Virus record (IMG/VR): IMGVR_UViG_3300030108_006260
Span: 62,001 to 126,000 of that record
Strand: one strand, 5' to 3'
DNA: 64,000 bases
Shown here in pieces: positions 6,230 to 21,311 of this stretch. The translations under genes and the position numbers were made by a program. Under the pieces are notes generated by a model. That model ran no database searches. It saw only the letters and a program-made list of their open reading frames with translations, and was not told where the DNA came from. Within the stretch, counting starts at the first letter, position 1, and every line of letters starts with the position of its first letter.

Positions 6230-6231
6230 TC

Positions 6232-7230: not shown

Positions 7231-7277
7231 TACACAAATTAGTGGCGTTGAACTGTATTTTATAGTATCCTAATTAT

Positions 7278-7880: not shown

Positions 7881-8469
7881 CTTACTCCTACTAGGATCGT
7901 GCCTAGCACCTAGGAGCAATGGAAACAGATACTGGAGCGAAGAAGACGCTCCCTTAGTGGTTGCCTATGATGACAACTTACCACAAGAGTACGTGGTAGG
8001 ACTCCATCAGGCCATACACCAGTGGAACATGGCCATAAACCGAAGATTACTGCGTATGGAATCAGTGGAACCGGAATCTCCCCTCGTGAACGGAGTAATA
8101 AGAGTAAGCCAAGGTACTATAGAAGTAGTCCATTTGAACCGATGGGGAAGAGTAAGAAGAATAGGCCAACACACTCCCGTTTTTGTCCACAATAGCGGAA
8201 GAATGATAAGGTCTCATATCATAATAGACACACGATATTCTGGGGGCTCCATGGCCAGAAAGATATCTGTACACGAAATAGGGCACGCCCTTGGTCTTAG
8301 ACATGACGAGTACGATCCTGGGTCTGTTATGTACCCTAGGATATCTGGTAATCAATTCATAAGAACTGATGACGTGGAGTACGTATTAGGGTATGTAGGA
8401 CAAAGTGTGCCTCAGTATAGAGAAATAAACTTTGCAACAAGAAACATCTTTAAAAGAGAGGAAGACTAG
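7855..8469 (+). CDS. matrixin-like zinc metalloprotease, probable lipoprotein
   Basis: HEIGHALGLRH plus SVMYP; MKKAAITCSLLLLGSC lipobox-like N-terminus. Confidence 0.88.
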   Translation: MKKAAITCSLLLLGSCLAPRSNGNRYWSEEDAPLVVAYDDNLPQEYVVGLHQAIHQWNMAINRRLLRMESVEPESPLVNGVIRVSQGTIEVVHLNRWGRVRRIGQHTPVFVHNSGRMIRSHIIIDTRYSGGSMARKISVHEIGHALGLRHDEYDPGSVMYPRISGNQFIRTDDVEYVLGYVGQSVPQYREINFATRNIFKREED

Positions 8470-8678
8470 TCCAGGTCGAACCAAGATCTGACCATGTCAT
8501 GCATGTCTTCTATGTAGGAAGAAAAATAATCTGCGTAGTATAGAGAGTACAAATCTTCATCTAGAGATGTGACAACGTAAAACTCTAGAGCGCCACAGTT
8601 CATCTTAAAAAGGTTCTCTGAAGCGCCCTTCTCGTCGTAGAGGTGAGTTACCAATAAAGTACCGTCTGATTCAAACAC
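8466..8678 (-). CDS. hypothetical protein
   Basis: 70-aa ORF, convergent with the matrixin pair. Confidence 0.5.
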   Translation of the reverse strand: MFESDGTLLVTHLYDEKGASENLFKMNCGALEFYVVTSLDEDLYSLYYADYFSSYIEDMHDMVRSWFDLD

Positions 8679-8861
8679 TCAGTCTTCCTTGTCTTTGTCA
8701 TCCGGAGGTATAGACTCAAAGTGATACTTTGAGCAGTTTATAACCGGGGCGTCGGGGTACTTGTCCTTTTCAGGATGAGTACAGGTTATTGTTACTTTTC
8801 CTGTTACCTGAGACACATGGACTCTTTTGTTCTTACAAGTGGCGNNNNNNNNNNAAGCCAT
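8679..8861 (-). CDS. hypothetical Cys-containing protein (spans N gap 8845-8854)
   Basis: ORF track; 5' end unreliable because of the gap. Confidence 0.4.
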   Translation of the reverse strand: MAXXXXATCKNKRVHVSQVTGKVTITCTHPEKDKYPDAPVINCSKYHFESIPPDDKDKED

Positions 8862-8917
8862 ACCGTCCTATTAGTGTCATATCTCACTCCTACAAGTAGG
8901 AATAAGATAACGGACAG

Positions 8918-9169
8918 ATGCATCATAAAAGAACTAAAGTATTATCTACTTGTATGATTTCTCCGGATGCAAAACCAGAACTAGTAAGGCTCCTAAATAC
9001 GTACCTAGAAACGAACGAGAGTGATAAAAGAGTTCGTCTCTGCAAACTAATGGGATGCAGAGACGAACTCATCACAAGGTGGGCTAAGGGGGAATCAAGA
9101 CCAGACGGTGTAAACTATAGATACCTAGTTGGAATTCTCAGAACAGAAATAGAGCGAGAAAAAGCCTAG
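8918..9169 (+). CDS. small XRE-like helix-turn-helix protein
   Basis: RLCKLMGCRDELITRWAKGESRP resembles the XRE HTH pattern (lA..lG.s...isrWE.G...P). Confidence 0.6.
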   Translation: MHHKRTKVLSTCMISPDAKPELVRLLNTYLETNESDKRVRLCKLMGCRDELITRWAKGESRPDGVNYRYLVGILRTEIEREKA

Positions 9170-9693
9170 TCCTGTTCAAGCTCTCCGTGCCAGTAAGTCC
9201 AGTTTACCCACTGCTCAGGAAGAGACATGTGAGGTTCAAGCCTAAATACTATAGCAGGAAGGTACTTGGGCTTAATTGGAACCTTTCGTAGCTTCATTCC
9301 TGCTTGTTCAGGCGTCTTACTTCCCTTGCGGTCGTTGCAAGGATAGCAACACATGACTATGTTCTCCCAGTTGGTAGCTCCTCCTCTAGAACGCGGAACT
9401 ACGTGGTCGTAGGTGAGTTTCTTAAGCGGAAGAGAATCACCACAGTACTGACATGAGTAGTCGTCCCTCAGTGCTACGTTTACCCTACTGAACCTTATGG
9501 GTCGCTTCTTCCTGCGCACTTTACGAAGTAGACGCACTACGGCAGGCATCTTGATTGTAATGGACACAGACCTAATATCCTCGTCATACTCCTCAAGGAT
9601 CTCGATCTTGTCCTCAAAAAACATGCAAATAGCCCTCTGCCAAGAAATGACGCGGTGAGGCTGGTAGGACTGATCTAATACTAAGGTACGCAT
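9166..9693 (-). CDS. HNH endonuclease (McrA-like bacterial family)
   Basis: TLVLDQSYQP N-terminus; CQYCG...TYDHVVPRSRGG...WENIVMCCYPCNDRKG. Confidence 0.92.
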   Translation of the reverse strand: MRTLVLDQSYQPHRVISWQRAICMFFEDKIEILEEYDEDIRSVSITIKMPAVVRLLRKVRRKKRPIRFSRVNVALRDDYSCQYCGDSLPLKKLTYDHVVPRSRGGATNWENIVMCCYPCNDRKGSKTPEQAGMKLRKVPIKPKYLPAIVFRLEPHMSLPEQWVNWTYWHGELEQD

Positions 9694-9723
9694 GACGCTC
9701 TCCGTTTGCTAGGGTTATTATGA

Positions 9724-11724
9724 TTATGGTTTTATTTGATGAGGAAATCCAAGGTAGTATCCTTGACCTAGAGTAACTCCTAGGCTCAGAAGAACTTTAA
9801 TGTCCTCTTCCGAGTTTACGCCTTCTGCAATGCAGTAAGCTCCTTGGGAGTCAACAGCGGCCACTAACCTAGACAACCTTTCCTTTTTCCATGGAGTAGA
9901 AGAAACATTCTCCACCCATATGCGATCTAGCTTTACAACATCAGGAGCTAGAACGATTACTGCGTTTATGGATGCATAGCCTGACCCCAAGTCATCCATG
10001 GCTAACTTTATTCCGTACTTTCGTGCTGTATTTCGTACATCGATATAGTTAGAATAACTTTCCAGAACTTGCTTCTCGCTAAGCTCAAGGCACACATTCA
10101 TACCTTCAAGAGAAGAAAGAAATTCTTCTGTAAGAGACCCGAAAGTAGCGGGGTAGAGATTCACAGAAGCATGCATAAGACCCTCTTTTTTGGCTGCCCC
10201 TATACAAGTGTCTAATGCTATCAAATCTACCTTATTCAGGATACCGGCTGAAGAAGCCGACCTGAACAGTATGTCGGGGTTGGTGAATACCTTATGACGA
10301 ACAAGATATTCTCCCCCAATAACTTCTCTCGTATTCAAATCAACAATAGGCTGTACTACTGCATAGTACAAAGAAGGGTCGAGTAGGCTCTCCTCCGTCT
10401 CAGAACCAGGGTAGTCATATGGAGTACCTATTACAACTCTATTTTTACCCGATGCCTTTGCTTTCAACAAGTGAGGAGAAGAGAGCCTGATAAGGTCATC
10501 AATACTTGTAATGTCGGGTGTAAGTTCTATAAGAGCAGCACTGGCCGTGATGGGAAGTTCGTGCTCTTCTTGCCTTATGACCTTCTCAGATAGTCTAGAG
10601 GTGAAAGCAGTACACATCAACTCTGCCTGCGCAAGATTATTGGCAAGGAACAGTACTAGGAATTCATCCCCTCCTATCCTAGAAACCCACGCAGGTCTTC
10701 CCATAACAGAACGAAGACACTCAGCTGTGTCTCGTAGAACCCTGTCACCTCCCGCTGTTCCAAGTAAATTATTAAGTTTCTTGAATCCATCCAGGTCCAG
10801 CAGCAGAGACCATCCCCTCTGTGGAGAGGCAGTAACAAGACCATGAAGCTGGTCTAAAGCGTTAGCCAGTCCTGCCCGGTTTAGGGCCTTTGTCAGGGGG
10901 TCTATGTGAACCATGTGCTCCAGCCTGGACCTCATGGATTTTATCTTTTTTAGAGAAGATTCTGCCTCACTAGCCTGGGCAGACACTCTTTGTATGTAGA
11001 ATATGGATATGCCTACAGCAATAGAAAGAGCGGAACCAAAAGAGAACAGAACAAAAACAAGACTTGTTTTAACGCCAGAGGACAGTAGAGCTATACTGAA
11101 GGCTAGAACTATGGATAGAGAGGCGAAGGGTACAATGTAATGAAATCCTTTGTACTCGTTCCTACTTCTTATCCAGTAAGACGCAGTAGAGTAAATAGAG
11201 ACCAAAAAGAAGTTAGTAGCAGTAGGCAAGGACATCTCATAGATGCCAGGCACCCAACTTCGGTCCCCTACAAGATATCCCAAAAGAGATGAAGTTGAAA
11301 TTGCTAAAACTAAAACATATGATGTGGAAGAAAAAACGAACTTCTTACTTATGCGTAAAATGTGAGCTAACCCCATAAGCACAAAGCCTACTGAGGTTAG
11401 AGGTGCTACCTTACTTCCTATGCCAGAAATATATATGAACCCATCTCCCTGTACAAGAGTATAAAACAGGGATAGAACACCTAATCCTACTGAAAGATAG
11501 GCCCCTACGTACGAGGATGGATTCCTTAAACTATAAACTAATACCAGTAATCCAATTGCAGTAACAGGGTGAGTTGTAGCACCTTGGCCAACAAATGCCA
11601 AAAGATAGCTAATACCAAACACCCACCCCAACAAGGTCCCCAAAGAGGTTAGTGCAACATACAACTGAACTACTGTGGCGACCTTACTCAGTAGATTTTC
11701 AAAATGTGTAGTCTCTTTATCCAC
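9724..11724 (-). CDS. membrane-anchored GGDEF-EAL c-di-GMP cyclase/phosphodiesterase
   Basis: About 7 TM segments; DPLTKALNR, DLDGFKKLNN, RIGGDEF; EAL domain with QPIVDL, EYLVR, SVNL, LELSE, DDLGSGY, VKLD, AEGV. Confidence 0.92.
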   Translation of the reverse strand: MDKETTHFENLLSKVATVVQLYVALTSLGTLLGWVFGISYLLAFVGQGATTHPVTAIGLLVLVYSLRNPSSYVGAYLSVGLGVLSLFYTLVQGDGFIYISGIGSKVAPLTSVGFVLMGLAHILRISKKFVFSSTSYVLVLAISTSSLLGYLVGDRSWVPGIYEMSLPTATNFFLVSIYSTASYWIRSRNEYKGFHYIVPFASLSIVLAFSIALLSSGVKTSLVFVLFSFGSALSIAVGISIFYIQRVSAQASEAESSLKKIKSMRSRLEHMVHIDPLTKALNRAGLANALDQLHGLVTASPQRGWSLLLDLDGFKKLNNLLGTAGGDRVLRDTAECLRSVMGRPAWVSRIGGDEFLVLFLANNLAQAELMCTAFTSRLSEKVIRQEEHELPITASAALIELTPDITSIDDLIRLSSPHLLKAKASGKNRVVIGTPYDYPGSETEESLLDPSLYYAVVQPIVDLNTREVIGGEYLVRHKVFTNPDILFRSASSAGILNKVDLIALDTCIGAAKKEGLMHASVNLYPATFGSLTEEFLSSLEGMNVCLELSEKQVLESYSNYIDVRNTARKYGIKLAMDDLGSGYASINAVIVLAPDVVKLDRIWVENVSSTPWKKERLSRLVAAVDSQGAYCIAEGVNSEEDIKVLLSLGVTLGQGYYLGFPHQIKP

Positions 11725-11744
11725 AAAATGAAAATAACAAATTA

Positions 11745-11981
11745 ATAGTCAAAGTATGCTGCTCTCCAACCTCCGCACAACTAGATATTTGAAAAAAGGC
11801 CTTATTCTCAAAATCTAAACTAGATCCCGCATGCACCTGCCCTACAGATGACACACCCTGCCGGATGTGCAAGTAGGGAGCCCCTCATTATTGATGGGTG
11901 GGAATCGAACCCTGAGTCCAGGGTGCAGTGGTCAGTTCGGCTAAAAACCCTGCCAAGGGCAGAGCAGCATACTTTGACTAT
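11745..11981. ncRNA. unassigned structured element closed by a perfect 21-bp inverted repeat
   Basis: ATAGTCAAAGTATGCTGCTCT (11745-11765) is the exact reverse complement of 11961-11981; internal hairpins; no ORF. Confidence 0.55.
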
Positions 11982-11998
11982 CAAAAGTTTATAAATAT

Positions 11999-12072
11999 TG
12001 GTACGGGATACTGGATTCGAACCAGTGTCTCAGCCTTGTAAGGGCCGTGCTAAACCACTCAGCTAATCCCGC
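11999..12072 (-). tRNA. tRNA-Val(TAC)
   Basis: Loop CTTACAA, T-arm GGTTCGAATCC, CCA. Confidence 0.95.
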
Positions 12073-12098
12073 TCTTGTATTTCTTCTTTTACAGAATA

Positions 12099-12173
12099 GG
12101 CGGAGGTAGAAGGGATCGAACCTACGACGACCCAGTTTCGAAGACTGGCGCTCTTCCTCTGAGCTATACCTCC
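12099..12173 (-). tRNA. tRNA-Arg(TCG)
   Basis: CCAGT-CTTCGAA-ACTGG; 3' end reads GCCT (CCA not fully encoded). Confidence 0.9.
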
Positions 12174-12176
12174 AGA

Positions 12177-12320
12177 GCTTGTTACTACGTGTTTGCGATT
12201 AGTTTAGAAGGTAGCTACTCCTTCTGCGTAAGCAACTCTACTCGCCGCTCTCGTTGAGATCCCGAGTTCCACTGTGCCTAACCATTGACTAGTATGATCG
12301 GCACGAGTGTAGTAACAAAC
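12177..12320 (-). ncRNA. unassigned multibranch RNA between the two tRNA-Arg genes
   Basis: 12-bp closing stem GTTTGTTACTAC/GTAGTAACAAGC enclosing hairpins GTGCC/GGCAC, TCTC/GAGA and AGAAGG/CCTTCT. Confidence 0.45.
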
Positions 12321-12396
12321 TGGCAGGGGTGGCAGGGATCGAACCTGCGCAAACCCAGTTTCGTAGACTGGTGCTCTTCCTCTGAGCTACACCCCT
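12321..12396 (-). tRNA. tRNA-Arg(ACG)
   Basis: CCAGT-CTACGAA-ACTGG, CCA. Confidence 0.95.
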
Positions 12397-12397
12397 G

Positions 12398-12468
12398 TGG
12401 AGTGGCGAGAAGGAATCAAACCTTCCTTAGCAGGGTTGCAACCTGCTTCGTTCTCAGAACATCACCAC
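12398..12468 (-). tRNA. tRNA-Cys(GCA), atypical D-arm and T-loop
   Basis: GCAGG-TTGCAAC-CCTGC, U73 discriminator, CCA; T-loop TTTGATT. Confidence 0.8.
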
Positions 12469-12469
12469 A

Positions 12470-12585
12470 AATCGCCACAAGTAGCACCTCCCGAGCAAGG
12501 TCCAATTCTACTTGTGACTTCCCGTCTCTCCGGGCTGTCACCTGCTTTTTCCATCCAACGGCCGCTGAGGGTTCGCGGGGATGCC
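12470..12585 (-). ncRNA. unassigned three-hairpin spacer RNA
   Basis: CATCC/GGATG + CCGC/GCGG; GTGAC-AGCCCGGAGAGACGGGAA-GTCAC; CAAGTAG/CTACTTG with inner ACCT/AGGT. Confidence 0.35.
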
Positions 12586-12660
12586 TGGAGCCCTAGCCCA
12601 GAATCGAACTGGGGTTTCATCTTTACCAAAGATGGGTACTAACCATTGTACTACTAGGGC
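12586..12660 (-). tRNA. tRNA-Thr(GGT)
   Basis: CATCT-TTGGTAA-AGATG, CCA. Confidence 0.95.
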
Positions 12661-12664
12661 TATT

Positions 12665-12750
12665 TGGCGGAAGGTTGAGGAGTCGAACCCCTACGCGTTA
12701 ACGCACCTCCGGGTTCAAACCGGATTGCCAACCACTTAGCGGAACCTTCC
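12665..12750 (-). tRNA. tRNA-Ser(TGA)
   Basis: TCCGG-TTTGAAC-CCGGA, long variable arm, CCA. Confidence 0.95.
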
Positions 12751-12751
12751 T

Positions 12752-12826
12752 TGGTGGGTCCGGAGGGACTTGAACCCTCAACCGTCAGGTTAAAAGCCTG
12801 CTGCACTACCATTGTGCTACGGACCC
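12752..12826 (-). tRNA. tRNA-Lys(TTT)
   Basis: Loop CTTTTAA, CCA. Confidence 0.95.
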
Positions 12827-12857
12827 GGTTGGGCCTTTTATAGTCGGCCAGGACTAG

Positions 12858-12930
12858 TGGAACCAGAGGGGATCGAACCCTCAGCCTCCTGCGTGCAAGG
12901 CAGGCGCTCTCCCAGTTGAGCTATGGCCCC
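12858..12930 (-). tRNA. tRNA-Ala(TGC)
   Basis: CCTGC-CTTGCAC-GCAGG, G3.U70, A73; followed by CTA rather than CCA. Confidence 0.93.
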
Positions 12931-12982
12931 TTTTTTAGAACGTATCACGTTTTCAATGAGAGTCAAGAAGATTGACTCAAAA

Positions 12983-13056
12983 TGGTACCGGGTGGGAGAA
13001 TCGAACTCCCGTATTGAGGACCAAAATCTCATGTCCTACCATTAGACGAACCCGGA
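12983..13056 (-). tRNA. tRNA-Gln(TTG)
   Basis: Loop TTTTGGT, CCA; 1:72 is a U.U mismatch. Confidence 0.92.
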
Positions 13057-13057
13057 A

Positions 13058-13144
13058 TGGCGGAAGGAACTGGAGTCGAACCAGATACCACGAGTGTACC
13101 AACGGCTTAGCAGGCCGCGCTAGTCCCAGACTAGGTTTCCTTCC
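13058..13144 (-). tRNA. tRNA-Ser(GCT)
   Basis: GCGGC-CTGCTAA-GCCGT, variable arm, CCA. Confidence 0.93.
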
Positions 13145-13147
13145 ATT

Positions 13148-13222
13148 TGGAGCGCCTGGAGGGAGTTGAACCCTCGCTTCTTGCTTGGCAAGCAAACGTG
13201 CCACCACCAACACTTCAGGCGC
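13148..13222 (-). tRNA. tRNA-Gly(GCC)
   Basis: Loop TTGCCAA, U73, CCA. Confidence 0.92.
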
Positions 13223-13226
13223 AAAA

Positions 13227-13304
13227 TGGTGGGAATGGGGAGACTCGAACTCCCTATCTCACGGGCCACAACCGTGTGCTTCGACCACTTTAGCTTCAGT
13301 CCCC
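13227..13304 (-). tRNA. tRNA-His(GTG)
   Basis: CACGG-TTGTGGC-CCGTG, extra 5' G, CCA. Confidence 0.93.
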
Positions 13305-13322
13305 ATAAAGACACAATAGTGC

Positions 13323-13409
13323 CGGTGGAGCGTGAAGGAATCGAACCTCATAGTACATAGACACTCGGTTTACAGCCGAGGGCAGGTCCCAGCCTGCTAT
13401 TCACGCTCC
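13323..13409 (-). tRNA. tRNA-Tyr(GTA)
   Basis: CTCGG-CTGTAAA-CCGAG, variable arm; 3' end reads CCG. Confidence 0.9.
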
Positions 13410-13955
13410 GGAATTCACGAAGTCCAAAATAACCTCGTTTAGGTAGGAAAGAACTCGTGGGTCTTTCTCGTCCCACTTATGCAGCATTAGAACGGAAAGG
13501 AGTTCATGGTTTCCCCAATTTTCAATGGCCTCAATGGCTGCTTCCCTTACAGCGGGATACTCTGATTTTAGTGCAGGTACTGCGAGTCTCTTGTGCCATG
13601 ACTCGATGCCTTCCATACGTCCCATCAAACGAAGGAAATCAGCAGCCACATGAATGTTTACGTCAGAGGGTAGTTCCTCCCAAAAAAGCAAGGTGGCACT
13701 CTTTAGGAAGTGAGACGAGAAAGTACCTGTAACGTGCAAACGAAGAGTATCCTCCATGCAATGACTTTTCCCATCGAATACAGGGTACTCGTGAAGGCTG
13801 GAAAGAAAAGAAGAAAAAGAAGAGTCTGTATCGTCTTCTTCATCGTGAAGTAGGCGATGAAGTTTTTCATTCATTAGTCGCTGCCTTACGAGAGCTTTCT
13901 TAGATAGGGATTTAATGGAATCCAGGGACAACTTAGTCTTTTCTTCTTCAGTCAT
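13401..13955 (-). CDS. HEAT-repeat-like helical protein embedded in tRNA cluster
   Basis: AVPALKSEYPAVREAAIEAIENWG...DEKDPRVLSYLNEVI matches a HEAT/PBS-lyase-like pattern. Confidence 0.6.
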   Translation of the reverse strand: MTEEEKTKLSLDSIKSLSKKALVRQRLMNEKLHRLLHDEEDDTDSSFSSFLSSLHEYPVFDGKSHCMEDTLRLHVTGTFSSHFLKSATLLFWEELPSDVNIHVAADFLRLMGRMEGIESWHKRLAVPALKSEYPAVREAAIEAIENWGNHELLSVLMLHKWDEKDPRVLSYLNEVILDFVNSGA

Positions 13956-14095
13956 ATGTATCCTGATGACAAAGGGCCGAGAGGACCCTCACGAGTAGTC
14001 TAGCGTCCATCCCCAATGGGGATCTTTGCGGACGCTTGCTTGCGCGTCGGCTTCAATCACATACATTAGTTCACCCTACTGTACTCTAGGTTACT

Positions 14096-14169
14096 TGGCG
14101 GAACGTACGGGGATCGAACCCGTCTCACCCGATAGACAGTCGGGCCGCATCCCAGATGCGCAACGCTCC
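14096..14169 (-). tRNA. tRNA-Asp(GTC)
   Basis: CCCGA-CTGTCTA-TCGGG, G73, CCA. Confidence 0.93.
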
Positions 14170-14170
14170 T

Positions 14171-14248
14171 TGGTGGACAGTTACGGAGTCGAACCGTAGT
14201 CCTAGTGAGGTCTTTCGATTTAACACTAGTCGAACCCTTCTACTGCCC
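14171..14248 (-). ncRNA. tmRNA tRNA-like domain (TLD) without mRNA-like domain
   Basis: GGGCAGT-AGAAGGGTTCGA-CTAGTG-(16-nt loop)-CACTAG-GAC-TACGG-TTCGACT-CCGTA-ACTGTCC-A-CCA: G3.U70, A73, stemless D-loop ending GG-N-TTCGAC, GAC linker. Same layout as the 5' and 3' ends of bacterial tmRNA. Confidence 0.8.
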
Positions 14249-14250
14249 GT

Positions 14251-14326
14251 TGGTACTGCTGGAAAGAATCGAACTTTCGTTTCCTGTGTATCAGACAGGT
14301 GCCCTAAACCATTGGACGACAGCAGC
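14251..14326 (-). tRNA. tRNA-Ile(GAT)
   Basis: CCTGT-CTGATAC-ACAGG, CCA. Confidence 0.95.
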
Positions 14327-14331
14327 AAAAT

Positions 14332-14943
14332 CTATTTAAGTAGCCTGTATTTGTGACGAATCAAGGACACTGCAACATTGTAGTCATGAGCCTTGTCTTT
14401 GAGCAGAGCATGGGATACCTTTTCCGCAAAAGGAGCATCCTTTACAAAGGACCAGAAAGCGTATGGCCAAACTCCTCTAACATCCAGTGAGCAGCAAAAA
14501 GACAAAAGCTTCGCGTCTAGAGAGGAAAGGGAATCTCTAGGAAAAATATAGTGTGATAGAAGAGAGAATGATGCGTTCTTTGACCACTCATCTGCCTTCT
14601 CAGACCCTTCCACGACGTAATATGTATAGTTATAACTTGAGGATTTTGTTTCGTATGGAGGCTCTCCAACCACAGAGGTACACCCGGATAGAGTTCCTTT
14701 TAAACGATCATGAAATATAAATAGATAGTAGTCTTTTCCTGGGGAGAAAGAGATAGGAAAGGGGTCTACTCCCCTTACAAGACCATCTTCCAACATCGAA
14801 GGTAGAAACCTAACACTGTCATGTCGACCGCAAGTTCCCCGAAGGGTTTCTCCGGTTTGAATTACAGAAGATCCTCGTACTACAGGAAAATCCTCAGTAG
14901 GATAACTTCCTTCAAATCCTACTACTGTTGGTTGATCACTCAT
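14332..14943 (-). CDS. hypothetical protein
   Basis: 203-aa ORF in co-directional order. Confidence 0.65.
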   Translation of the reverse strand: MSDQPTVVGFEGSYPTEDFPVVRGSSVIQTGETLRGTCGRHDSVRFLPSMLEDGLVRGVDPFPISFSPGKDYYLFIFHDRLKGTLSGCTSVVGEPPYETKSSSYNYTYYVVEGSEKADEWSKNASFSLLSHYIFPRDSLSSLDAKLLSFCCSLDVRGVWPYAFWSFVKDAPFAEKVSHALLKDKAHDYNVAVSLIRHKYRLLK

Positions 14944-14955
14944 ATCTCTGAAGAT

Positions 14956-15627
14956 TTACAGTAGGCGACACAGCTTAGGTGCGTAATCATAGTTACTCTC
15001 CACTAAAAGTGCAGTAAGTTCTGACAAGTATGTATCTTTCTCTTCTTGTGACTCCAGGTTAGTCACAAAGTAAGTCACATCTGTAGACTGTGTGTGAATA
15101 AGTAGGTCGTAAGAGTAGGTATTGAAAAAAACTCGTGTGACCTTCTTCTCATTAGGGGTAGCTAGCGGTACCTTCTCTGCGAGAGGGTAACCATTAGAAA
15201 TTTCTTCCATATGAGTGTATTCTTCTGAGTACACCGGGTAGAACTTGAAGTAGTTAGGAGGGTAAGACCTTGCATATCTTGATGTAGGAAACCACTCGTT
15301 CTTCATGAACTCAATAAGGTCTACTGCGTCACTTGCGTAATATACTACTTTATTTACCCTATCTATGACTACAAAAAATCGATCGTATTCACCTACTACC
15401 GTGGGTGATTTAAGTGGTAGGAACCTGTCCTCAAAGTATACTACGAAGGGTAGGTATAGGTACTTCCTATAACAACCTAGAACGGTATCCTTTGCTTTTT
15501 CAAAGTAAGTTTTCATTTTACCTATGGTACTTTCATAGAAAGTAATGCTTGGTACTCCCGGCTGGTTATGCTCCAGCTTGACGTCTTTATAAGAAACGCA
15601 TCCTAACTGATTAGATGACGGGAGCAA
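14956..15627 (-). CDS. hypothetical protein (Tyr/Phe-rich)
   Basis: 223-aa ORF. Confidence 0.65.
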   Translation of the reverse strand: MLPSSNQLGCVSYKDVKLEHNQPGVPSITFYESTIGKMKTYFEKAKDTVLGCYRKYLYLPFVVYFEDRFLPLKSPTVVGEYDRFFVVIDRVNKVVYYASDAVDLIEFMKNEWFPTSRYARSYPPNYFKFYPVYSEEYTHMEEISNGYPLAEKVPLATPNEKKVTRVFFNTYSYDLLIHTQSTDVTYFVTNLESQEEKDTYLSELTALLVESNYDYAPKLCRLL

Positions 15628-15738
15628 AATTTACTTCTTAAGTCCCCTAATATGAGGTCTCCGTAAATGAGTACGGACTGAGCTACGGGAGCGTGGAAAG
15701 GTTCTAGCACGAGAACCTTTCGTAAGTCAAGAGAAAAG

Positions 15739-16725
15739 TTAGAAAGAATCCAACTGGGACTTGAAGAAGTCGCGTCCCAAGGTCATTACTTTCTTATTTA
15801 CATCCTTGTAAGTCAATCCACTCTCTTCTAAATCTAGAGTACATTCTTTTTGAATGTCGTTTGCGAGCCACTTTAGAAAGGTTCCTGTGGAGGTGACATC
15901 CAGAGGATGCCCTTCTTCTTTTAGAAAGAAGATTCCCTGCGCAAGGCGTGCCTTACTGACTGCGTACTTTACAAAGGCATCAACCGATTCCAGTTTTTCC
16001 GGAGACATCTGTGGACCCTTCTTCCGGGGTGCCACCATCTTGTGCTTTTCCCCTTTCGACTTGAAGGGCAGCACTGGATTTCCAAAGTGCTCCCACATAG
16101 GAGTCCATACAACTCCTTCTCCGGTTCCTCTGATCCCAAAGTTTTCGCCCCAGGGGCAACAATCTTCCACATTGGCAGTAATAGACATTACTTCTTCCAT
16201 GAAGGAAGATCTGCTTTCGCTACTGCTGAAGTCGACACGGAGTGTGTACGAAGGAACAGCTAGGATAGAGTGGATCAATCCAGGAGAGGTCACGATTGCG
16301 TCAAGTGCTGGAACAGGTACGAGAGGCTGTCCCTTCTCTACCTCTGCATGAACAGAGAAAAGAACCCACTGCCGCTCGGGTAGACTGTTTACAGCTACCC
16401 CTTTCTGGATTCCAGGGCCTACCCACTCCCCAAACAGAACAATGTCAAACTCTGGGTCGATGGAAAGTTCCCGTCGAACAGAATCCTCGATCTTACGAAT
16501 CGACTTTTCGTGCTTTGATACAAAGGTAGCAAAACCAAAAGAATCGTTTCGTTCCTTTGTACGAGACTGAGGGATTAGTTCGCTAGGCGTACATCGTACT
16601 CCCGCGTTCGTACCATGAAGCTTCACTGTTCCACGGTACGTAACAACACTACGTGGTAGCTGACCAGACTTGTCTAGGTACCTAGCTACCTGATAAAAAG
16701 AATCGATTGATGGAAACTTGTGCAT
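15739..16725 (-). CDS. ATP-dependent RNA ligase (Rnl2-like nucleotidyltransferase)
   Basis: Motif I VKLHGTN, III LFGEW, IIIa VLF, IV GEGVVW, V FKSK; AGGAG SD upstream. Confidence 0.88.
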   Translation of the reverse strand: MHKFPSIDSFYQVARYLDKSGQLPRSVVTYRGTVKLHGTNAGVRCTPSELIPQSRTKERNDSFGFATFVSKHEKSIRKIEDSVRRELSIDPEFDIVLFGEWVGPGIQKGVAVNSLPERQWVLFSVHAEVEKGQPLVPVPALDAIVTSPGLIHSILAVPSYTLRVDFSSSESRSSFMEEVMSITANVEDCCPWGENFGIRGTGEGVVWTPMWEHFGNPVLPFKSKGEKHKMVAPRKKGPQMSPEKLESVDAFVKYAVSKARLAQGIFFLKEEGHPLDVTSTGTFLKWLANDIQKECTLDLEESGLTYKDVNKKVMTLGRDFFKSQLDSF

Positions 16726-16758
16726 TTATTTTTTTCTCCTGAAGGAACAGTGTCCCTC

Positions 16759-16846
16759 GTTGCTCTCTACCATAAGAAGGGTTGTATCTTCCCTCAACCC
16801 AGAGGCTAAGCACCTTGTTGCTCTCTACCATGAGAAGGGTTGAAAC
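16759..16846. CRISPR. Cas-less mini CRISPR-like unit (2 repeats, 1 spacer)
   Basis: GTTGCTCTCTACCAT(A/G)AGAAGGGTTG at 16759 and 16817 (25/26 identical). The second copy ends GTTGAAAC, the first is degenerate (GTTGTATC). 28-nt spacer 16789-16816; weak internal hairpin. Confidence 0.6.
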
Positions 16847-16872
16847 AAGTATGTAGAGGCAGTTTATTATAG

Positions 16873-16947
16873 TGGTGCCCCGAACAGGAATCGAACCTGT
16901 GACCACCGGGCTTCAACCGGCCGCTCTACCAACTGAGCTATCGGGGC
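16873..16947 (-). tRNA. tRNA-Phe(GAA)
   Basis: Loop TTGAAGC, CCA. Confidence 0.95.
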
Positions 16948-16948
16948 G

Positions 16949-17023
16949 TGGCAGGCCACTAAGGACTTGAACCCTAACTAACGAATTTGGAATTCGTTGT
17001 GCTACCAATTACACTAGTGACCT
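16949..17023 (-). tRNA. tRNA-Trp(CCA)
   Basis: ACGAA-TTCCAAA-TTCGT, CCA. Confidence 0.95.
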
Positions 17024-17024
17024 A

Positions 17025-17100
17025 TGGCGGGAGATGCAGGGTTTGAACCTGCGACAATTGAGTTAACAGCTCACCGCTCTACCAACTGAGCTAATCTCCC
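17025..17100 (-). tRNA. tRNA-Asn(GTT) copy 1
   Basis: Loop CTGTTAA, G73, CCA. Confidence 0.93.
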
Positions 17101-17102
17101 TT

Positions 17103-17179
17103 TGGCGGGCCCTGCAAGAATCGAACTTGCCTTATTCTGGTTAACAGCCAGGCGCACTCACCAGAGGTGCTAAGGACCC
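17103..17179 (-). tRNA. tRNA-Asn(GTT) copy 2 (divergent body)
   Basis: Loop CTGTTAA, G73, CCA; acceptor and D-arm differ from copy 1. Confidence 0.9.
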
Positions 17180-17230
17180 ATTGTGCAGGGAAGCCACTCC
17201 CTGCGGACAAATACGTATTCAGTTTTCAAG

Positions 17231-17305
17231 TGGATCGGGAGGCTGGGTTTGAACCAGCGACATACGGAATCAGAACCCGTCGTTCTACCACTGAACTACT
17301 CCCGA
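17231..17305 (-). tRNA. tRNA-Gln(CTG)
   Basis: ACGGG-TTCTGAT-TCCGT, U1-A72, CCA. Confidence 0.9.
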
Positions 17306-17306
17306 A

Positions 17307-17382
17307 TGGTGGATCTGTGGGGAATCGAACCCCAAATCGTCCGGTTAAGAGCCGGCTGCTTTACCATTGAAGCTACAGATCC
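17307..17382 (-). tRNA. tRNA-Lys(CTT)
   Basis: Loop CTCTTAA, CCA. Confidence 0.95.
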
Positions 17383-17402
17383 AGTACGAGCCTAAGATAT
17401 AA

Positions 17403-17441
17403 AGAACAAAAAAACCGCCGAGGCTAGTGCCTGGGCGGTTC
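17403..17441 (-). terminator. intrinsic terminator of putative attenuator
   Basis: AACCGCCCAGGC-ACTA-GCCTCGGCGGTT (11 of 12 bp paired) followed by TTTTTGTTCT on the minus strand, about 20 nt before tRNA-Lys. Confidence 0.85.
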
Positions 17442-17460
17442 AAAGTAACACTTTGTCGTT

Positions 17461-17595
17461 TTACGACAGGGTGGAACCGCACACACCCGTTGAAATATTG
17501 GTAGACTGCACATCAAAAGAAAACGCAGCAATACTGTCCCGGCGATACGAGCGCCAAGCAGAGCTAAGTTTTATATTTTGATGACGTGTCTTCAT
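17461..17595 (-). CDS. 44-aa leader peptide (uORF) of putative attenuator
   Basis: ATG 17595 to TAA 17461: MKTRHQNIKLSSAWRSYRRDSIAAFSFDVQSTNISTGVCGSTLS; below the 60-aa track cutoff. Confidence 0.65.
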   Translation of the reverse strand: MKTRHQNIKLSSAWRSYRRDSIAAFSFDVQSTNISTGVCGSTLS

Positions 17596-17604
17596 GACTT
17601 AGAG

Positions 17605-17633
17605 AGTATGAGGTATGAGTAGATACATGTCAA
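17605..17633 (-). promoter_or_regulatory. sigma70-type promoter TTGACA-17-CATACT
   Basis: -35 at 17628-17633, -10 at 17605-17610; predicted +1 near 17599-17598, only 3-4 nt before the uORF ATG. Confidence 0.8.
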
Positions 17634-17674
17634 GAAAAAAGTTACTAAGTTGTAGAGAAAGTTAAACTACAACC

Positions 17675-18496
17675 CTAAAGTGCCCAAGGACCTTCTTCTG
17701 ACGTGAACCCGGCCGAGTTCCAATGACCGCCTCCTCCTAGAGATCTTGCGAGAGAAGACACATCAAAGTTAGACCCCTCTTCATCGGAACGCAAGGAGTA
17801 AACGAACAATCCGTTGTTTATCTGCCTCCAGCCTACACTGAACAGGCTGTCTTTAGCCAAGGAGTTTAGTAGCTCTGACACAGCATAGAAAGGTGCGTTC
17901 ACAACTGGGATGTCTGAGTATCCCTTGAAGGTCGAGTTAATAGCCTGTAGCTTCATCTGTTCAACGTAGGAACCCTTGGCACGGAGTATAGCCTCCCCTT
18001 CACTACAAACAACTCCTGGATTTGTAGAAAGGCGATGGTCCAAAAGGTTCCAGTTATCGAAGCTAAAGGTATAGCTGGTGACTACGGCATTGATCTCGAC
18101 CGACTTCGGCACAGAAAACCTCCACAAATCCCTATCCTCCACACAGTCAACCAAAAGAGGTCTCTTAGTGTTCGGATGGAAAAAGTCCCAAGACATTCCG
18201 GCACCCGACCTATCCATGTCGAAAAAGCAACCGGGCATACCTTCAAGGTCGTCTTTTGCAGTTAGGTGGTGGTCCAGCACTGTCAAACTTCGTGCCATGT
18301 CCGAAAGGAGCATAAGGTCGTCTCTTTTATAAGAGAAGTCAAGGATATAAACGTCCTTGTCTGTGACATCCGGAATTTCTAGGTCAGAGTAGTTAACGGA
18401 TTTGTAGTCTGCTCGGTCACCAAACTTCTTGTAAGCAGCCCACGCAGAGGTGAACCCGTCGGGACAATCCCCATGGTATAAGACTAAAGTATCCAT
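17675..18496 (-). CDS. DHH/DHHA1 phosphoesterase
   Basis: LYHGDCPDGF, ILDFS, LDHH, GGGGH..SAGF motifs. Confidence 0.9.
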   Translation of the reverse strand: MDTLVLYHGDCPDGFTSAWAAYKKFGDRADYKSVNYSDLEIPDVTDKDVYILDFSYKRDDLMLLSDMARSLTVLDHHLTAKDDLEGMPGCFFDMDRSGAGMSWDFFHPNTKRPLLVDCVEDRDLWRFSVPKSVEINAVVTSYTFSFDNWNLLDHRLSTNPGVVCSEGEAILRAKGSYVEQMKLQAINSTFKGYSDIPVVNAPFYAVSELLNSLAKDSLFSVGWRQINNGLFVYSLRSDEEGSNFDVSSLARSLGGGGHWNSAGFTSEEGPWAL

Positions 18497-18505
18497 AGTA
18501 AATTA

Positions 18506-18709
18506 TTAGTTTTCCTTGCTGTTCCACACAGCAATAAAAGAATCAATTATAGGGTTAGAGTTATTCCTTGCATCATCTAAGTTCTTTGCAGGAACGATGA
18601 TCTTTAGAAGAAGCTTCTTTCGGGGTCGAATAAGAAACACTCTAACTTCGGAAAGGTGGTCATCCCCTGGCGAGATGTAGTGTACACTGAGGTCCTGAGT
18701 AGTAAGCAT
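18506..18709 (-). CDS. hypothetical protein
   Basis: 67-aa ORF in operon order. Confidence 0.45.
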   Translation of the reverse strand: MLTTQDLSVHYISPGDDHLSEVRVFLIRPRKKLLLKIIVPAKNLDDARNNSNPIIDSFIAVWNSKEN

Positions 18710-18721
18710 AATAATAAACCT

Positions 18722-19234
18722 CTAGTGAAAAGTGTCTGGGTCAGTAGTTCCACTATCAGAATCAGTATCATCATCTTCTTCTGAGTAGTTTCCCCCAGTA
18801 GAAATGGAGTCTTGCATAATTGATGCTATCCCAAGCTTTCTTGCTGCTGCCAACGCCTGATAGGCTGTTACACATAGACGGGCATACCGTACACTAGATG
18901 TCGTTCCCTCCAGCATGTAGTTGTCACCGTACATAAAACGGTTGATTTCATCGTCAGTGGCACCTGCCGACTCCAGATCTTTCTGGATAAAGTTAAACAT
19001 TTTGCCTTGAAAGGTCATGTTCTCTTCTGTCGAAGAGGCTGTCATTCGAACGTGAGATAATGCTGTCTCTTGTAACGAATGAGCGAGTACCTGAGACAGT
19101 ACTAGGTCTCTAGTAACTAGTTTAAGTGCACCGAGGACATCCTCCTTGGTGGCATCTTCTGTCACTAGCTTATCGATTCGATTATCTACGATAGAGTCTA
19201 AAAGATCAGTAGGATCTACAGTTTCGTCACTCAT
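18722..19234 (-). CDS. hypothetical protein
   Basis: 170-aa ORF with SD-like AAGGA upstream. Confidence 0.65.
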   Translation of the reverse strand: MSDETVDPTDLLDSIVDNRIDKLVTEDATKEDVLGALKLVTRDLVLSQVLAHSLQETALSHVRMTASSTEENMTFQGKMFNFIQKDLESAGATDDEINRFMYGDNYMLEGTTSSVRYARLCVTAYQALAAARKLGIASIMQDSISTGGNYSEEDDDTDSDSGTTDPDTFH

Positions 19235-19260
19235 TATTTTCCTTACTAAGAAGAACAGGG

Positions 19261-19782
19261 CTACTTTACAAGTCTCTTCTTTTTCTTAGCAGCGAGTCTC
19301 TTGTTTTTTGCTTCAATCTTTTCCCACTCCCGCCACCTACGATGGGAGTTTATGATCCGGTCCAGTTTCTGTTTCTCAAATTTTTCTGCTCTTGAGAAAT
19401 CTGGATGGCGTACTTCTAGGCACTTAAACCTATCATCGTGAGGGTAAGCATATTTGTCGCAATCAAACTGGCGGGGGCCCATATGGAGATGCAGCATCTC
19501 ATGGTAAAGAACGAAGTCAAGGTACCACAGAGGAACTCTTTTGTCATCCAATATAGAGTTTATTTTCAAGAACCTTTCCCTAAACACACAAAGAGCAAGA
19601 GATAAGTTAGAGTTGTTACGTCCCAGAGGGAAAGTTCGCCAGCCCACTCCCCCGCACACCATGCCTGAAAATTGGACCAGGTTGACCTTATCAAACCTCT
19701 GTATAAGTCGAGTCTTCCTAAACTTAGGTTTGGGGGGCTTTCTGACAGACACTGTAATTTCCTCCACTAGAGAAATAACCAC
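19261..19782 (-). CDS. SprT/M48-like HExxH metallopeptidase-domain protein
   Basis: DFVLYHEMLHL...PHDDRFK pattern. Confidence 0.7.
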   Translation of the reverse strand: MVISLVEEITVSVRKPPKPKFRKTRLIQRFDKVNLVQFSGMVCGGVGWRTFPLGRNNSNLSLALCVFRERFLKINSILDDKRVPLWYLDFVLYHEMLHLHMGPRQFDCDKYAYPHDDRFKCLEVRHPDFSRAEKFEKQKLDRIINSHRRWREWEKIEAKNKRLAAKKKKRLVK

Positions 19783-19994
19783 ACAGGCCCCTGGCAGTAA
19801 CCTTACTTTAATTTTTACAACTATACAATAATATTATATGCTTCTAAGGAAGAACCACCAAGAATCGGGTAGGAAGTCCAAAATCTCAAACCATAGTATA
19901 TCTAAAATATCATCCAGTATAAAAAACAGGAAAAATCCAGATAAACAGCCACATAGGAAACAAAAAGGACCTGTAGCTATTACTGGTAGCTTCA

Positions 19995-20519: not shown

Positions 20520-20520
20520 G

Positions 20521-20955: not shown

Positions 20956-21311
20956 TTTTTGTTTTTCTTTCTTCTTCTTTTACGGGCTTTCTTCCTGGCG
21001 GCAGCACTGGGTCCCTTCTTTCTGAGGAGGGGCACCACGGACCTAGGAAGGGGGCCATCGAGTAGCCTATCAGGGCTTTTCTCTAAGGATATTCCGTCCC
21101 ACCTGTGAACCGATTTTACGTGTTCCCAAAGTTCTCCAGGAGAGCTTGCGTGAAATACACTTCTGTTGCATGGTGACTTGCAAGGTACCTCTACTAATCC
21201 GTTTGGTGTGTTATACAAAGAGTAACACACTTTCTCAACGGAACAAGGCTTACAGTAAGGACAAGGCCATACACCTTTGTGGTCTGAGTTTCCTGTACAT
21301 AAGGGGCTCAT
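20952..21311 (-). CDS. Cys/His-rich hypothetical protein with basic tail
   Basis: CPYC..C, C..PC, H...VH; Lys/Arg-rich C-terminus. Confidence 0.5.
   Translation of the reverse strand: MSPLCTGNSDHKGVWPCPYCKPCSVEKVCYSLYNTPNGLVEVPCKSPCNRSVFHASSPGELWEHVKSVHRWDGISLEKSPDRLLDGPLPRSVVPLLRKKGPSAAARKKARKRRRKKNKK

What the first reader, a model, noticed from the sequence alone, without database searches (positions are those of the whole stretch)
14171..14248. 78-nt 'mini-tmRNA': a complete tRNA-like domain with the mRNA domain and pseudoknots absent
Seen: every TLD hallmark is present in unpermuted order: 7-bp acceptor with G3.U70 and A73-CCA (AlaRS identity), stemless D-loop ending GG-G-TTCGAC, P2 CTAGTG/CACTAG, GAC linker, and a perfect 5-bp T-stem. 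P2 is closed by only 16 nt, so there is no tag ORF. It sits between tRNA-Ile and tRNA-Asp, separated from each by only 1-2 nt. Known: the TLD binds SmpB and is alanylated; tag-less tmRNAs are described from some mitochondria. Inference: the phage could (i) titrate SmpB to block trans-translation, (ii) accept stalled chains onto Ala without SsrA tagging, protecting phage proteins when mRNA or tRNA is being cut, or (iii) act as an Ala donor or decoy. Intact pairings argue against a decayed remnant.
Basis: partly seen in the sequence, partly recalled or inferred. Interest (0 to 1): 0.9.

Follow-up and report, generated by a model that had tools for sequence, protein, structure and literature searches.

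The report
Phage tag-less mini-tmRNA (TLD-only)
A marine giant phage carries, inside its tRNA gene cluster, a 78-base RNA gene that is just the alanine-accepting tRNA-like head of the bacterial ribosome-rescue RNA (tmRNA) without its tagging message. This kind was first seen in mycobacteriophage DS6A, and here it turns out to be common in uncultivated phages.

Summary
Window 14171-14248 (minus strand) is a complete, unpermuted tmRNA tRNA-like domain (TLD). Its P2 helix is closed after 16 nt, so it has no reading frame and no pseudoknots. It lies 2 nt after tRNA-Ile and 1 nt before tRNA-Asp.

- **Model fit.** Rfam's tmRNA model spans it end to end with a 310-position deletion. That is the best hit of 4227 families, but at 33.1 bits it is below the 47-bit cut-off. 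ARAGORN and default Rfam miss it.
- **Family model.** A covariance model built without the window element scores it 65.8 bits, against 32.8 for the best true tRNA. The same model scores the known 'TLD-only' tmRNA of mycobacteriophage DS6A 61.2 bits.
- **Alanine identity.** G3·U70 and A73 are invariant, including 72/72 sequences where the search did not impose them.
- **Not an artefact.** Identical copies occur in three other marine assemblies.

This is a new member of a known kind. It is most likely alanylated, binds host SmpB, and competes with host tmRNA so that stalled chains escape SsrA tagging. The function is inferred, not shown.

The parts
14171..14248 (-). Whole TLD-only (tag-less) tmRNA gene, 78 nt
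   Evidence: Sequence read. RF00023 full-span match, 33.1 bits. Family models R1 73.6 bits and leave-one-out R2 65.8 bits.
14242..14248 (-). Acceptor stem 5' strand GGGCAGU (G3 of the G3·U70 pair at 14246)
   Evidence: Pairs 1-3 are invariant, and pairs 4-7 covary across the family.
14229..14241 (-). Stemless D-loop analogue AGAAGGGUUCGAC, with the GG and UUCGAC motifs of the tmRNA 5' end
   Evidence: Aligned to the RF00023 consensus GAucuGGaUUCGAC. The E. coli ssrA alignment allows comparison.
14224..14229 (-). P2 helix 5' strand CUAGUG
   Evidence: Five of the six P2 pairs show changes on both sides across the family.
14208..14223 (-). 16-nt closure of P2: A-rich 5' internal loop UUAAA, mini-hairpin UC-GAAA-GA, then 3' CCU. 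It takes the place of about 310 tmRNA model positions (pseudoknots and tag reading frame).
   Evidence: The same layout (A-rich loop plus a 2-4 bp hairpin) is seen in most family members and in DS6A.
14202..14207 (-). P2 helix 3' strand CACUAG
14199..14201 (-). GAC linker. Together with the preceding G it forms the tmRNA GGAC motif.
   Evidence: alignment to the RF00023 consensus cGGACGcGGG.
14182..14198 (-). T arm: stem UACGG/CCGUA and loop UUCGACU
   Evidence: T-stem pairs covary.
14175..14181 (-). Acceptor stem 3' strand ACUGUCC (U70 at 14177)
14171..14174 (-). Discriminator A73 and encoded CCA end
   Evidence: A73 is 72/72 in the set where the search pattern did not impose it.
14251..14326 (-). 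Upstream tRNA-Ile(GAU), 2 nt from the element. It supplies the co-transcription and tRNA-type processing context.
   Evidence: ARAGORN. RF00005 63.6 bits.
14096..14169 (-). Downstream tRNA-Asp(GUC), 1 nt from the element
   Evidence: ARAGORN. RF00005 41.3 bits.

Best explanation
The element is a phage-encoded, tag-less tmRNA made of the tRNA-like domain only. It is of the same kind as the 'TLD only' gene of mycobacteriophage DS6A.

**Proposed mechanism (every step inferred, none shown here).**
1. It is transcribed with the phage tRNA cluster and cut out by the tRNA-processing enzymes. RNase P would cut at G1, and the 3' end already carries CCA.
2. Host AlaRS charges it with alanine through G3·U70 and A73.
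3. Its elbow and P2 stub bind host SmpB.
4. As Ala-TLD·SmpB·EF-Tu it competes with the host's full-length tmRNA for SmpB and for ribosomes stalled on broken mRNAs.
5. It has no message, so a stalled chain receives alanine but no SsrA degradation tag. The net effect is that host trans-translation tagging is suppressed during infection.

**What is shown.** The anatomy, the family membership, the covariation, and the strict conservation of the alanine identity set.
For: **Anatomy and model fit**
- Best Rfam family is tmRNA, spanning both ends with a 310-position deletion.
- ARAGORN and RF00005 make no tRNA call.
- Leave-one-out model R2 scores the element 65.8 bits and DS6A (JN698994 28478-28560, unannotated and intergenic) 61.2 bits, against at most 32.8 bits for tRNAs.
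- Ten of ten relatives tested pass the RF00023 gathering score, at 52-76 bits.

**Selection on structure**
- 98.2% of cells are paired in one set and 98.6% in the other, against about 67-69% when shuffled and about 50% when slid.
- 14 of 18 pairs in one set and 13 of 18 in the other show changes on both sides.

**Selection on charging**
- G1-C72, G2-C71, G3·U70 and A73 are each 72/72 in sequences found with a pattern that did not constrain the acceptor end.
- DS6A has them too.

**Dependence on the host**
- tblastn finds no SmpB homologue in the window or beside any viral copy.
- Clustering of neighbouring genes finds no conserved protein partner.

**Literature**
[quoted passage not shown] 2009).
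- A 63-nt TLD construct binds SmpB in crystals (PMC3929946, citing Bessho 2007).
- A TLD fragment with SmpB supports template-free poly-Ala synthesis in vitro (PMC3929946, citing Shimizu and Ueda 2006).
Against: - No expression, charging or SmpB-binding data exist for this RNA or for any metagenomic relative.
- The element is below Rfam's tmRNA cut-off (33.1 against 47 bits). It has C4-G69 rather than the usual G4-C69.
[quoted passage not shown] Charging may therefore not be needed for inhibition.
- How a ribosome holding peptidyl-Ala-TLD and no message would be released is unknown.
- Why a phage gains from blocking tagging is not established, and some phages need tmRNA.
- The host is unknown. 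Two neighbouring proteins found no relatives in IMG/VR other than the same contig, and no cultured phage resembles the region: no DNA match and only one distant protein hit.
Confidence: 0.5

Rival explanations
1. Pure SmpB sponge. The RNA only sequesters host SmpB, and so destabilises and disables host tmRNA. It never needs to be charged or to enter the ribosome.
For: [quoted passage not shown] No phage smpB is present to compensate.
Against: A sponge would not need AlaRS identity. Yet G3·U70 and A73 are invariant in 72/72 sequences where the search did not impose them, while pairs 4-7 of the same stem vary freely.
Confidence: 0.2
2. Tag-less rescue helper. The RNA adds ribosome-rescue capacity for the phage. 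It takes over stalled chains, possibly adding one or several alanines without a template. The ribosome is then freed by drop-off with Pth, by ArfA/ArfB-type release, or by a later tmRNA visit. The benefit is more free ribosomes while host and phage mRNAs or tRNAs are being cut, rather than inhibition of the host system.
For: - Charging identity is conserved.
- TLD with SmpB makes poly-Ala without mRNA in vitro (PMC3929946).
- CDS-less tmRNAs persist together with SmpB in jakobid mitochondria (PMC11915505).
- The window element sits in a 27-tRNA island with an RNA ligase (PF09414, 15739-16725) and a peptide deformylase.
- DS6A carries an RtcB-like ligase.
Against: - No release factor, Pth or ArfB-like gene was found beside the copies.
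- In E. coli a similar molecule inhibited trans-translation rather than helping it (PMC4131195, PMC11915505).
- 150 of 214 loci have no tRNA within 3 kb, so a link to tRNA repair is not general.
Confidence: 0.22
3. Decoy for host immunity. The RNA mimics tmRNA to occupy defence proteins that read tmRNA-like RNAs, or to absorb nucleases that attack tmRNA. An example of the former is the SmpB-like OB domains predicted in CoCoNuT systems.
For: CoCoNuT systems carry SmpB-like domains predicted to bind tmRNA, and RtcB's most frequent bacterial target is reported to be SsrA (PMC11090510). The family is strongly virus-associated.
Against: This is conjecture only. No defence or anti-defence gene is consistently nearby. 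It also does not explain the invariant alanine identity.
Confidence: 0.05
4. Non-functional remnant or artefact. Candidates are a full tmRNA that suffered a deletion, an attP fragment of ssrA, a misassembly, or an odd tRNA.
For: It is below the Rfam gathering score and is not called by ARAGORN.
Against: - All 18 pairs are intact.
- Identical copies occur in four assemblies, including a 97.5-98.6% identical strain.
- There are 175 distinct relatives with compensatory changes.
- The 5' half is present, unlike attP cores, and DS6A integrates at tRNA-Lys rather than ssrA (PMC10865867).
- There is no anticodon arm, and RF00005 is below threshold.
Confidence: 0.02

Closest known systems
Mycobacteriophage DS6A 'TLD only' tmRNA (tmRNA Website tmID 11587; Mao et al. 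2009 RNA Biol 6:355, as cited in PMC4131195 and PMC11915505)
   Same: Both are phage-encoded, unpermuted tRNA-like domains with G3·U70 and A73. In both, P2 is closed by an A-rich internal loop and a short hairpin, with no reading frame and no pseudoknots. The sizes are close (83 nt against 78 nt). Both score above 60 bits on the leave-one-out family model.
   Different: - DS6A is a 60-kb temperate siphovirus of Mycobacterium, and its gene stands alone between gp33 and gp34. The window phage is an uncultivated 240-kb marine phage, and its gene is embedded in a tRNA array.
- DS6A has GUCGAC/GCAC and ends ACUA. The window element has UUCGAC/GGAC and an encoded CCA.
- The window element has C4-G69.
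Bacterial one-piece tmRNA (SsrA; Rfam RF00023)
   Same: The 5' and 3' ends align base for base with the model. This covers the acceptor, the GG...UUCGAC D-loop, P2a, GGAC, the T arm and ACCA (compared with E. coli).
   Different: It lacks about 310 model positions: P2b-d, PK1-PK4, the resume codon, the tag reading frame and the stop codon. It cannot template a tag. It scores 33.1 bits, below the 47-bit cut-off.
CDS-less organellar tmRNAs (jakobid and oomycete mitochondria, Rfam RF02544; two Mallomonadaceae plastids; PMC11915505)
   Same: They are reduced to the tRNA-like domain, have no tag reading frame, and are presumed to work with SmpB.
   Different: The organellar genes are mostly circularly permuted and arose by reductive evolution in organelles that import SmpB. 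The phage form is unpermuted, is carried by a virus, and must act alongside an intact host tmRNA.
Laboratory TLD constructs (for example T. thermophilus 5' 25 nt + UUCG + 3' 34 nt, PDB 2CZJ; TLD fragments of Shimizu and Ueda 2006, as described in PMC3929946)
   Same: The design is the same: tmRNA ends joined by a short loop. Such constructs bind SmpB and, with SmpB, take part in peptidyl transfer (poly-Ala) in vitro.
   Different: They are man-made. The natural phage versions keep a longer P2 stub with a conserved A-rich internal loop and mini-hairpin.
Full-length and two-piece tmRNAs of phages (Bxz1-type mycobacteriophages, Bacillus phage G, pelagiphages and cyanophages; PMC4131195, PMC9004378)
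   Same: They are phage-borne ssrA-derived genes, sometimes near tRNA genes.
   Different: They keep a tag reading frame and are found by ARAGORN. The element here has none and is missed.

Membership tests
tmRNA tRNA-like domain (RF00023 ends) | 7-bp acceptor stem with G3·U70, discriminator A73, CCA end | tested here: met
   GGGCAGU/ACUGUCC followed by ACCA.
tmRNA tRNA-like domain (RF00023 ends) | Stemless D-loop with GG and the UUCGAC motif, P2a helix, GGAC linker, 5-bp T stem with GUUCGAnUC loop | tested here: met
   Residue-by-residue alignment to the RF00023 consensus. E. coli ssrA was aligned to the same model.
tmRNA (RF00023) as curated by Rfam | Score at or above the gathering cut-off of 47 bits | tested here: not met
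   33.1 bits, although it is the best family and spans model positions 1-374. It was not reported at gathering threshold over the whole window. Ten of ten relatives tested do pass, at 52-76 bits.
Functional full tmRNA | mRNA-like domain with resume codon, tag reading frame and stop, plus pseudoknots | tested here: not met
   Only 16 nt lie between the P2 strands. ARAGORN finds no tag peptide. 310 model positions are deleted.
Phage TLD-only tmRNA (DS6A kind) | Phage-borne, unpermuted TLD whose P2 is capped by a short loop or hairpin; no CDS | tested here: met
   Anatomy. The contig is an IMG/VR viral contig of 240 kb. Relatives sit beside capsid, portal, protease and terminase genes.
Phage TLD-only tmRNA (DS6A kind) | Shared sequence and structure profile with DS6A | tested here: met
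   Model R2 contained neither sequence. The window element scores 65.8 bits, DS6A 61.2 bits, and the best tRNA 32.8 bits.
Phage TLD-only tmRNA (DS6A kind) | Inhibits host trans-translation; binds SmpB; alanylated | not testable with these tools
   Only literature on a similar molecule is available (PMC4131195, PMC11915505, PMC3929946). Indirect support comes from invariant G3·U70 and A73.
Canonical tRNA (RF00005) | D stem, anticodon arm with a 7-nt loop and an anticodon; RF00005 at or above 29 bits; ARAGORN call | tested here: not met
   ARAGORN makes no call. RF00005 makes no hit at gathering threshold. The tRNA match lost to tmRNA in the clan competition.
Mitochondrial CDS-less tmRNA (RF02544) | Match to the mt-tmRNA model (mostly permuted gene order) | tested here: inconclusive
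   No RF02544 hit was listed at E up to 10, but lower-scoring overlapping hits from the same clan are hidden by the tool. The gene order here is unpermuted.
attP core derived from host ssrA | Only the 3' part of ssrA, next to an integrase | tested here: not met
   The 5' acceptor strand and D-loop are present and paired. Among the 20 ORFs scanned against Pfam, 10 near the element and 10 larger ORFs elsewhere in the window, no integrase was found. DS6A integrates at tRNA-Lys (PMC10865867).

The most novel reading that the evidence does not exclude
Tag-less, alanine-charged mini-tmRNAs may be a widespread and so far uncounted class of phage genes, with hundreds of copies in viromes. On this reading they actively reprogramme ribosome rescue during infection. 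They could release or Ala-tail stalled chains without the SsrA degron, as a general takeover or counter-defence measure against RNA-cutting immunity. They would then be more than passive SmpB sponges.
Probability: 0.25. Interest if true: 0.75.

Novelty: new member of a known kind. Interest (0 to 1): 0.5.

Why it matters
Trans-translation is nearly universal in bacteria and is a drug target, yet what viruses do to it is barely known. The single published phage TLD-only gene (DS6A) looked like a curiosity. The current tmRNA database lists only 9 'standard, no CDS' sequences among 97,179 (PMC11915505).

This window, and the searches it prompted, show a different picture:

- The same design recurs in at least 175 distinct sequences from very different phages.
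- It is missed by ARAGORN, and partly missed by Rfam cut-offs.
- It keeps the alanine identity set without exception.

The family therefore offers natural, compact probes of SmpB and stalled-ribosome biology. It gives a tractable model for the unresolved question of what a tag-less tmRNA does, which also applies to mitochondria. It also flags an annotation gap in phage genomes.

Tried and rejected
- **blastn against cultured phages.** Searching the region and the 78 nt against 50,697 phage records gave no homologue, only short T-arm matches. A search with a consensus-like relative found only a 3'-TLD-like piece in cyanophage S-SSM7, 32.5 bits, probably part of a permuted tmRNA.
- **My first gapped pattern was wrong.** It had one N too many and returned coding sequences.
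- **MAFFT alignment.** Aligning all relatives misplaced the 5' acceptor strand because D-loop length varies. I rebuilt a seed from members with equal D-loop length.
- **Close relatives of the phage.** Two neighbouring proteins returned only the same contig. A 1159-aa protein had one distant hit, at 30% identity. Synteny in relatives could not be tested.
- **Phage-encoded SmpB.** tblastn with E. coli SmpB found none in the window or in the viral loci. It did find smpB next to the low-scoring bacterial hits, which shows those are 3' ends of ordinary host tmRNAs.
- **Conserved protein partner.** Clustering 2778 neighbouring ORFs gave no universal family. The top clusters are ordinary phage structural and replication genes.
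- **Hidden mini-ORF in the P2 closure.** There is no conserved stop or frame across the family, judged by inspecting.
- **Literature access.** Mao et al. 2009 is not held, and the supplements of PMC11915505 held nothing on phage CDS-less forms.

Full report
**1. What is in the sequence.**

On the minus strand, window 14171-14248 reads as a 78-nt RNA with this layout:

- Acceptor 5' strand GGGCAGU.
- A 13-nt unpaired stretch ending GGGUUCGAC.
- P2 helix CUAGUG/CACUAG, closed by 16 nt.
- A GAC linker.
- T stem UACGG/CCGUA with loop UUCGACU.
- Acceptor 3' strand ACUGUCC, then ACCA.

The third acceptor pair is G·U and the discriminator is A. The 16-nt closure folds as an A-rich 5' internal loop (UUAAA), a two-pair GAAA hairpin, and CCU.

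ARAGORN finds 27 tRNA genes in the window, all on the minus strand. tRNA-Ile(GAU) ends 2 nt upstream of the element and tRNA-Asp(GUC) starts 1 nt downstream. ARAGORN does not call the element, and neither does Rfam at gathering thresholds.

**2. Is it more than chance, and is it a tRNA or a tmRNA end?**

I searched the element alone against all 4227 Rfam families. The best match is tmRNA (RF00023). Model positions 1-374 align across the full 78 nt, with 310 internal positions replaced by 14 nt. The score is 33.1 bits, E 1.8e-12.

The score is below Rfam's 47-bit cut-off, which explains the silence of the default scan. In a slightly wider search the flanking tRNAs masked it. The tRNA model lost the clan competition and never reached its own 29-bit cut-off. 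The folding energy alone is not unusual, z = -1.4.

**3. Relatives.**

*First scan.* I wrote a structural pattern: UUCGAC, a 16-46 nt gap, GAC, the T arm, and a 3' end of UCCACCA. Of the 120 hits (119 new loci plus the window's own contig), 113 have a 5' strand that pairs at six or more of seven positions with the acceptor 3' strand. These give 90 distinct sequences of 67-92 nt.

*Models.* A 24-sequence seed alignment gave an RNAalifold structure of 18 pairs, 13 of them with compensatory changes. I built a covariance model from it (R1), and a second one without the window sequence (R2). R2 scores:

| Sequence | Bits | E-value |
|---|---|---|
| Window element | 65.8 | 5e-13 |
| Best genuine tRNA in the window | 32.8 | 2.8e-05 |
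| 3' end of E. coli ssrA | 29.8 | 0.00014 |

*Covariation, first set.* On 79 distinct model-aligned sequences, 98.2% of stem cells are standard pairs. The figure is 69% after shuffling and about 50% after sliding the partners. Fourteen of 18 pairs change on both sides.

*Second scan, removing ascertainment.* The first pattern forced U70 and ACCA. I therefore ran a second pattern that constrains only UUCGAC...GGAC and the T loop. All 88 hold a full-length match to R2, at 43.8-84 bits.

- In their 72 distinct sequences, G1-C72, G2-C71, G3·U70 and A73 are each 72/72.
- Pairs 4-7 covary freely in the same sequences.
- The CCA end is usually not encoded.

*Union.* Together there are 214 loci and 175 distinct sequences. 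The median length is 82 nt, and 92% fall between 76 and 86 nt.

**4. Where the family lives.**

In 185,579 bacterial and archaeal species genomes, the first pattern found 79 places.

- Only about nine are true mini-forms by the model. Four of them sit in dense tRNA arrays of 10-21 tRNAs within 8 kb, which is typical of phage contigs binned into MAGs. One is the same contig as an IMG/VR cyanophage-like record.
- The low-scoring remainder are ordinary host tmRNA 3' ends: 28 of them lie next to smpB.

The design is therefore strongly virus-associated.

Among the 214 loci, 36 have a tRNA within 20 nt, 27 lie in arrays of five or more tRNAs, and 150 have no tRNA within 3 kb. Clustering 2778 neighbouring ORFs gave no universal partner. 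The largest clusters are prohead protease, portal, capsid, terminase and YqaJ recombinase, which are ordinary phage genes. tblastn finds no SmpB homologue in the window or beside any viral copy.

**5. This particular copy.**

The window belongs to IMG/VR contig IMGVR_UViG_3300030108_006260, 240 kb. The identical 78 nt with the same flanking tRNAs occurs in three further assemblies, one of them named as Tara Oceans:

- Two are 100% identical over about 3 kb.
- One is a 97.5-98.6% identical strain with 39 substitutions nearby and none in the element. About 1.3 substitutions would be expected in 78 nt, so this is only weak evidence of constraint.

Misassembly is excluded. Two neighbouring proteins found no relatives in IMG/VR other than the same contig. 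No cultured phage resembles the region: there was no DNA match and only one distant protein hit. Synteny in relatives could not be examined.

The surrounding island also encodes an RNA ligase (PF09414, 15739-16725), a peptide deformylase and c-di-GMP enzymes.

**6. What is already known.**

The held literature names one phage precedent. [quoted passage not shown] 2009).

The 2025 update of the tmRNA database repeats this. It counts 79 phage tmRNAs and only 9 'standard, no CDS' sequences among 97,179 (PMC11915505).

I located the DS6A gene with my model at JN698994 28478-28560. It is intergenic and unannotated in the record. It scores 61.2 bits on R2, although it does not fit either of my search patterns. 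Its P2 closure has the same layout as the window element.

The window element is therefore a member of the DS6A kind. Other tag-less forms are the mostly permuted mitochondrial genes and two plastid genes (PMC11915505). I found no paper in the library that describes the breadth of this family in viromes.

**7. How it most likely works.**

*Shown here:* the anatomy, the family, the covariation, and absolute conservation of the alanine identity set.

*From established knowledge:*

- G3·U70 with A73 is the AlaRS identity set.
- SmpB binds the TLD elbow and stands in for the missing anticodon arm.
- A 63-nt TLD construct crystallised with SmpB.
- A TLD fragment with SmpB supports template-free poly-Ala synthesis in vitro (PMC3929946).

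*Inference:* the RNA is cut from the tRNA transcript, charged with alanine and bound by host SmpB. It then competes with host tmRNA for SmpB and for stalled ribosomes, so chains get alanine but no degradation tag.

I prefer this 'charged competitor' model over a pure SmpB sponge. A sponge would not need G3·U70 and A73, yet they never vary while the rest of the acceptor stem does.

The sponge remains a live rival, because inhibition in E. coli was reported to be independent of chargeability. A positive 'tag-less rescue' role, with or without Ala-tailing, is equally compatible with the sequence data. A decoy role towards immune systems that carry SmpB-like domains (PMC11090510) is speculation.

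A remnant, an attP core, an artefact or an odd tRNA are each excluded by the evidence in sections 2-5. In addition, DS6A integrates at tRNA-Lys, not at ssrA (PMC10865867).

**8. Verdict.**

The part that seems to be new is the scale and uniformity of the family in uncultivated phages, together with the fact that standard annotation misses it:

- ARAGORN never calls it correctly. In three loci it invents long 'tmRNAs' with implausible tags.
- Rfam 15 catches the consensus-like members but not this one.

Function is inferred and needs the simple tests listed under next steps.

Noticed in passing
window 4672-23998 and 58502-58576: There are 27 tRNA genes, all on the minus strand, covering most amino acids and nearly all with an encoded CCA. 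It is a very large tRNA island for a phage.
   Followed up: partly
window 15739-16725 (-): An RNA ligase (PF09414) lies inside the tRNA island, 1.5 kb from the element. DS6A, the other phage with a TLD-only gene, has an RtcB-like ligase, gp76. This hints at a link between RNA repair and the mini-tmRNA, but n = 2.
   Followed up: partly
window 9724-11724 (-) and 6232-7230 (-): The phage encodes c-di-GMP signalling proteins: a GGDEF+EAL protein of 666 aa and a response-regulator+GGDEF protein of 332 aa.
   Followed up: no
window 19995-20519 (-): A phage peptide deformylase (PF01327, E 1e-48) is another translation-related gene in the same region.
   Followed up: no
L134:2952-3026 (Klebsiella phage KP8, MG922974 34665-34739): A gene annotated 'tRNA-OTHER' has the same acceptor stem as the window element (GGGCAGU/ACUGUCC-ACCA, G3·U70, A73). 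It keeps a D arm and has an abnormal short 'anticodon' loop, and ARAGORN gives 'tRNA-???'. It is a different alanine-identity tRNA-like RNA in an N4-like phage.
   Followed up: partly
L015:2976-3318, L041:5905-6228, L102:10275-10670: ARAGORN reports long 'tmRNA' genes with implausible tag peptides. Their 3' ends are really the mini-TLD, so this is an annotation trap.
   Followed up: partly
window 14251-14326; L152:2801-2877; L167:817-893; L218:12113-12186: tRNA-Ile(GAU) lies directly next to the mini-TLD in four otherwise different tRNA arrays.
   Followed up: no
window 11892-11954 (-) and 13323-13409 (-): The family model gives weak matches here, 16 and 13 bits, in gaps of the tRNA array that ARAGORN leaves empty. 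They may be degenerate tRNA-like pieces.
   Followed up: no
L313:3990-4041 (Synechococcus phage S-SSM7, NC_015287 about 21008-21059): A 3'-TLD-like piece (32.5 bits) lies under a gene annotated as a hypothetical protein (SSSM7_025). It is probably part of an unannotated permuted tmRNA.
   Followed up: partly
L132:28478-28560 (mycobacteriophage DS6A, JN698994): The published TLD-only tmRNA is not annotated in the GenBank record. It lies in the gap between gp33 and gp34.
   Followed up: yes
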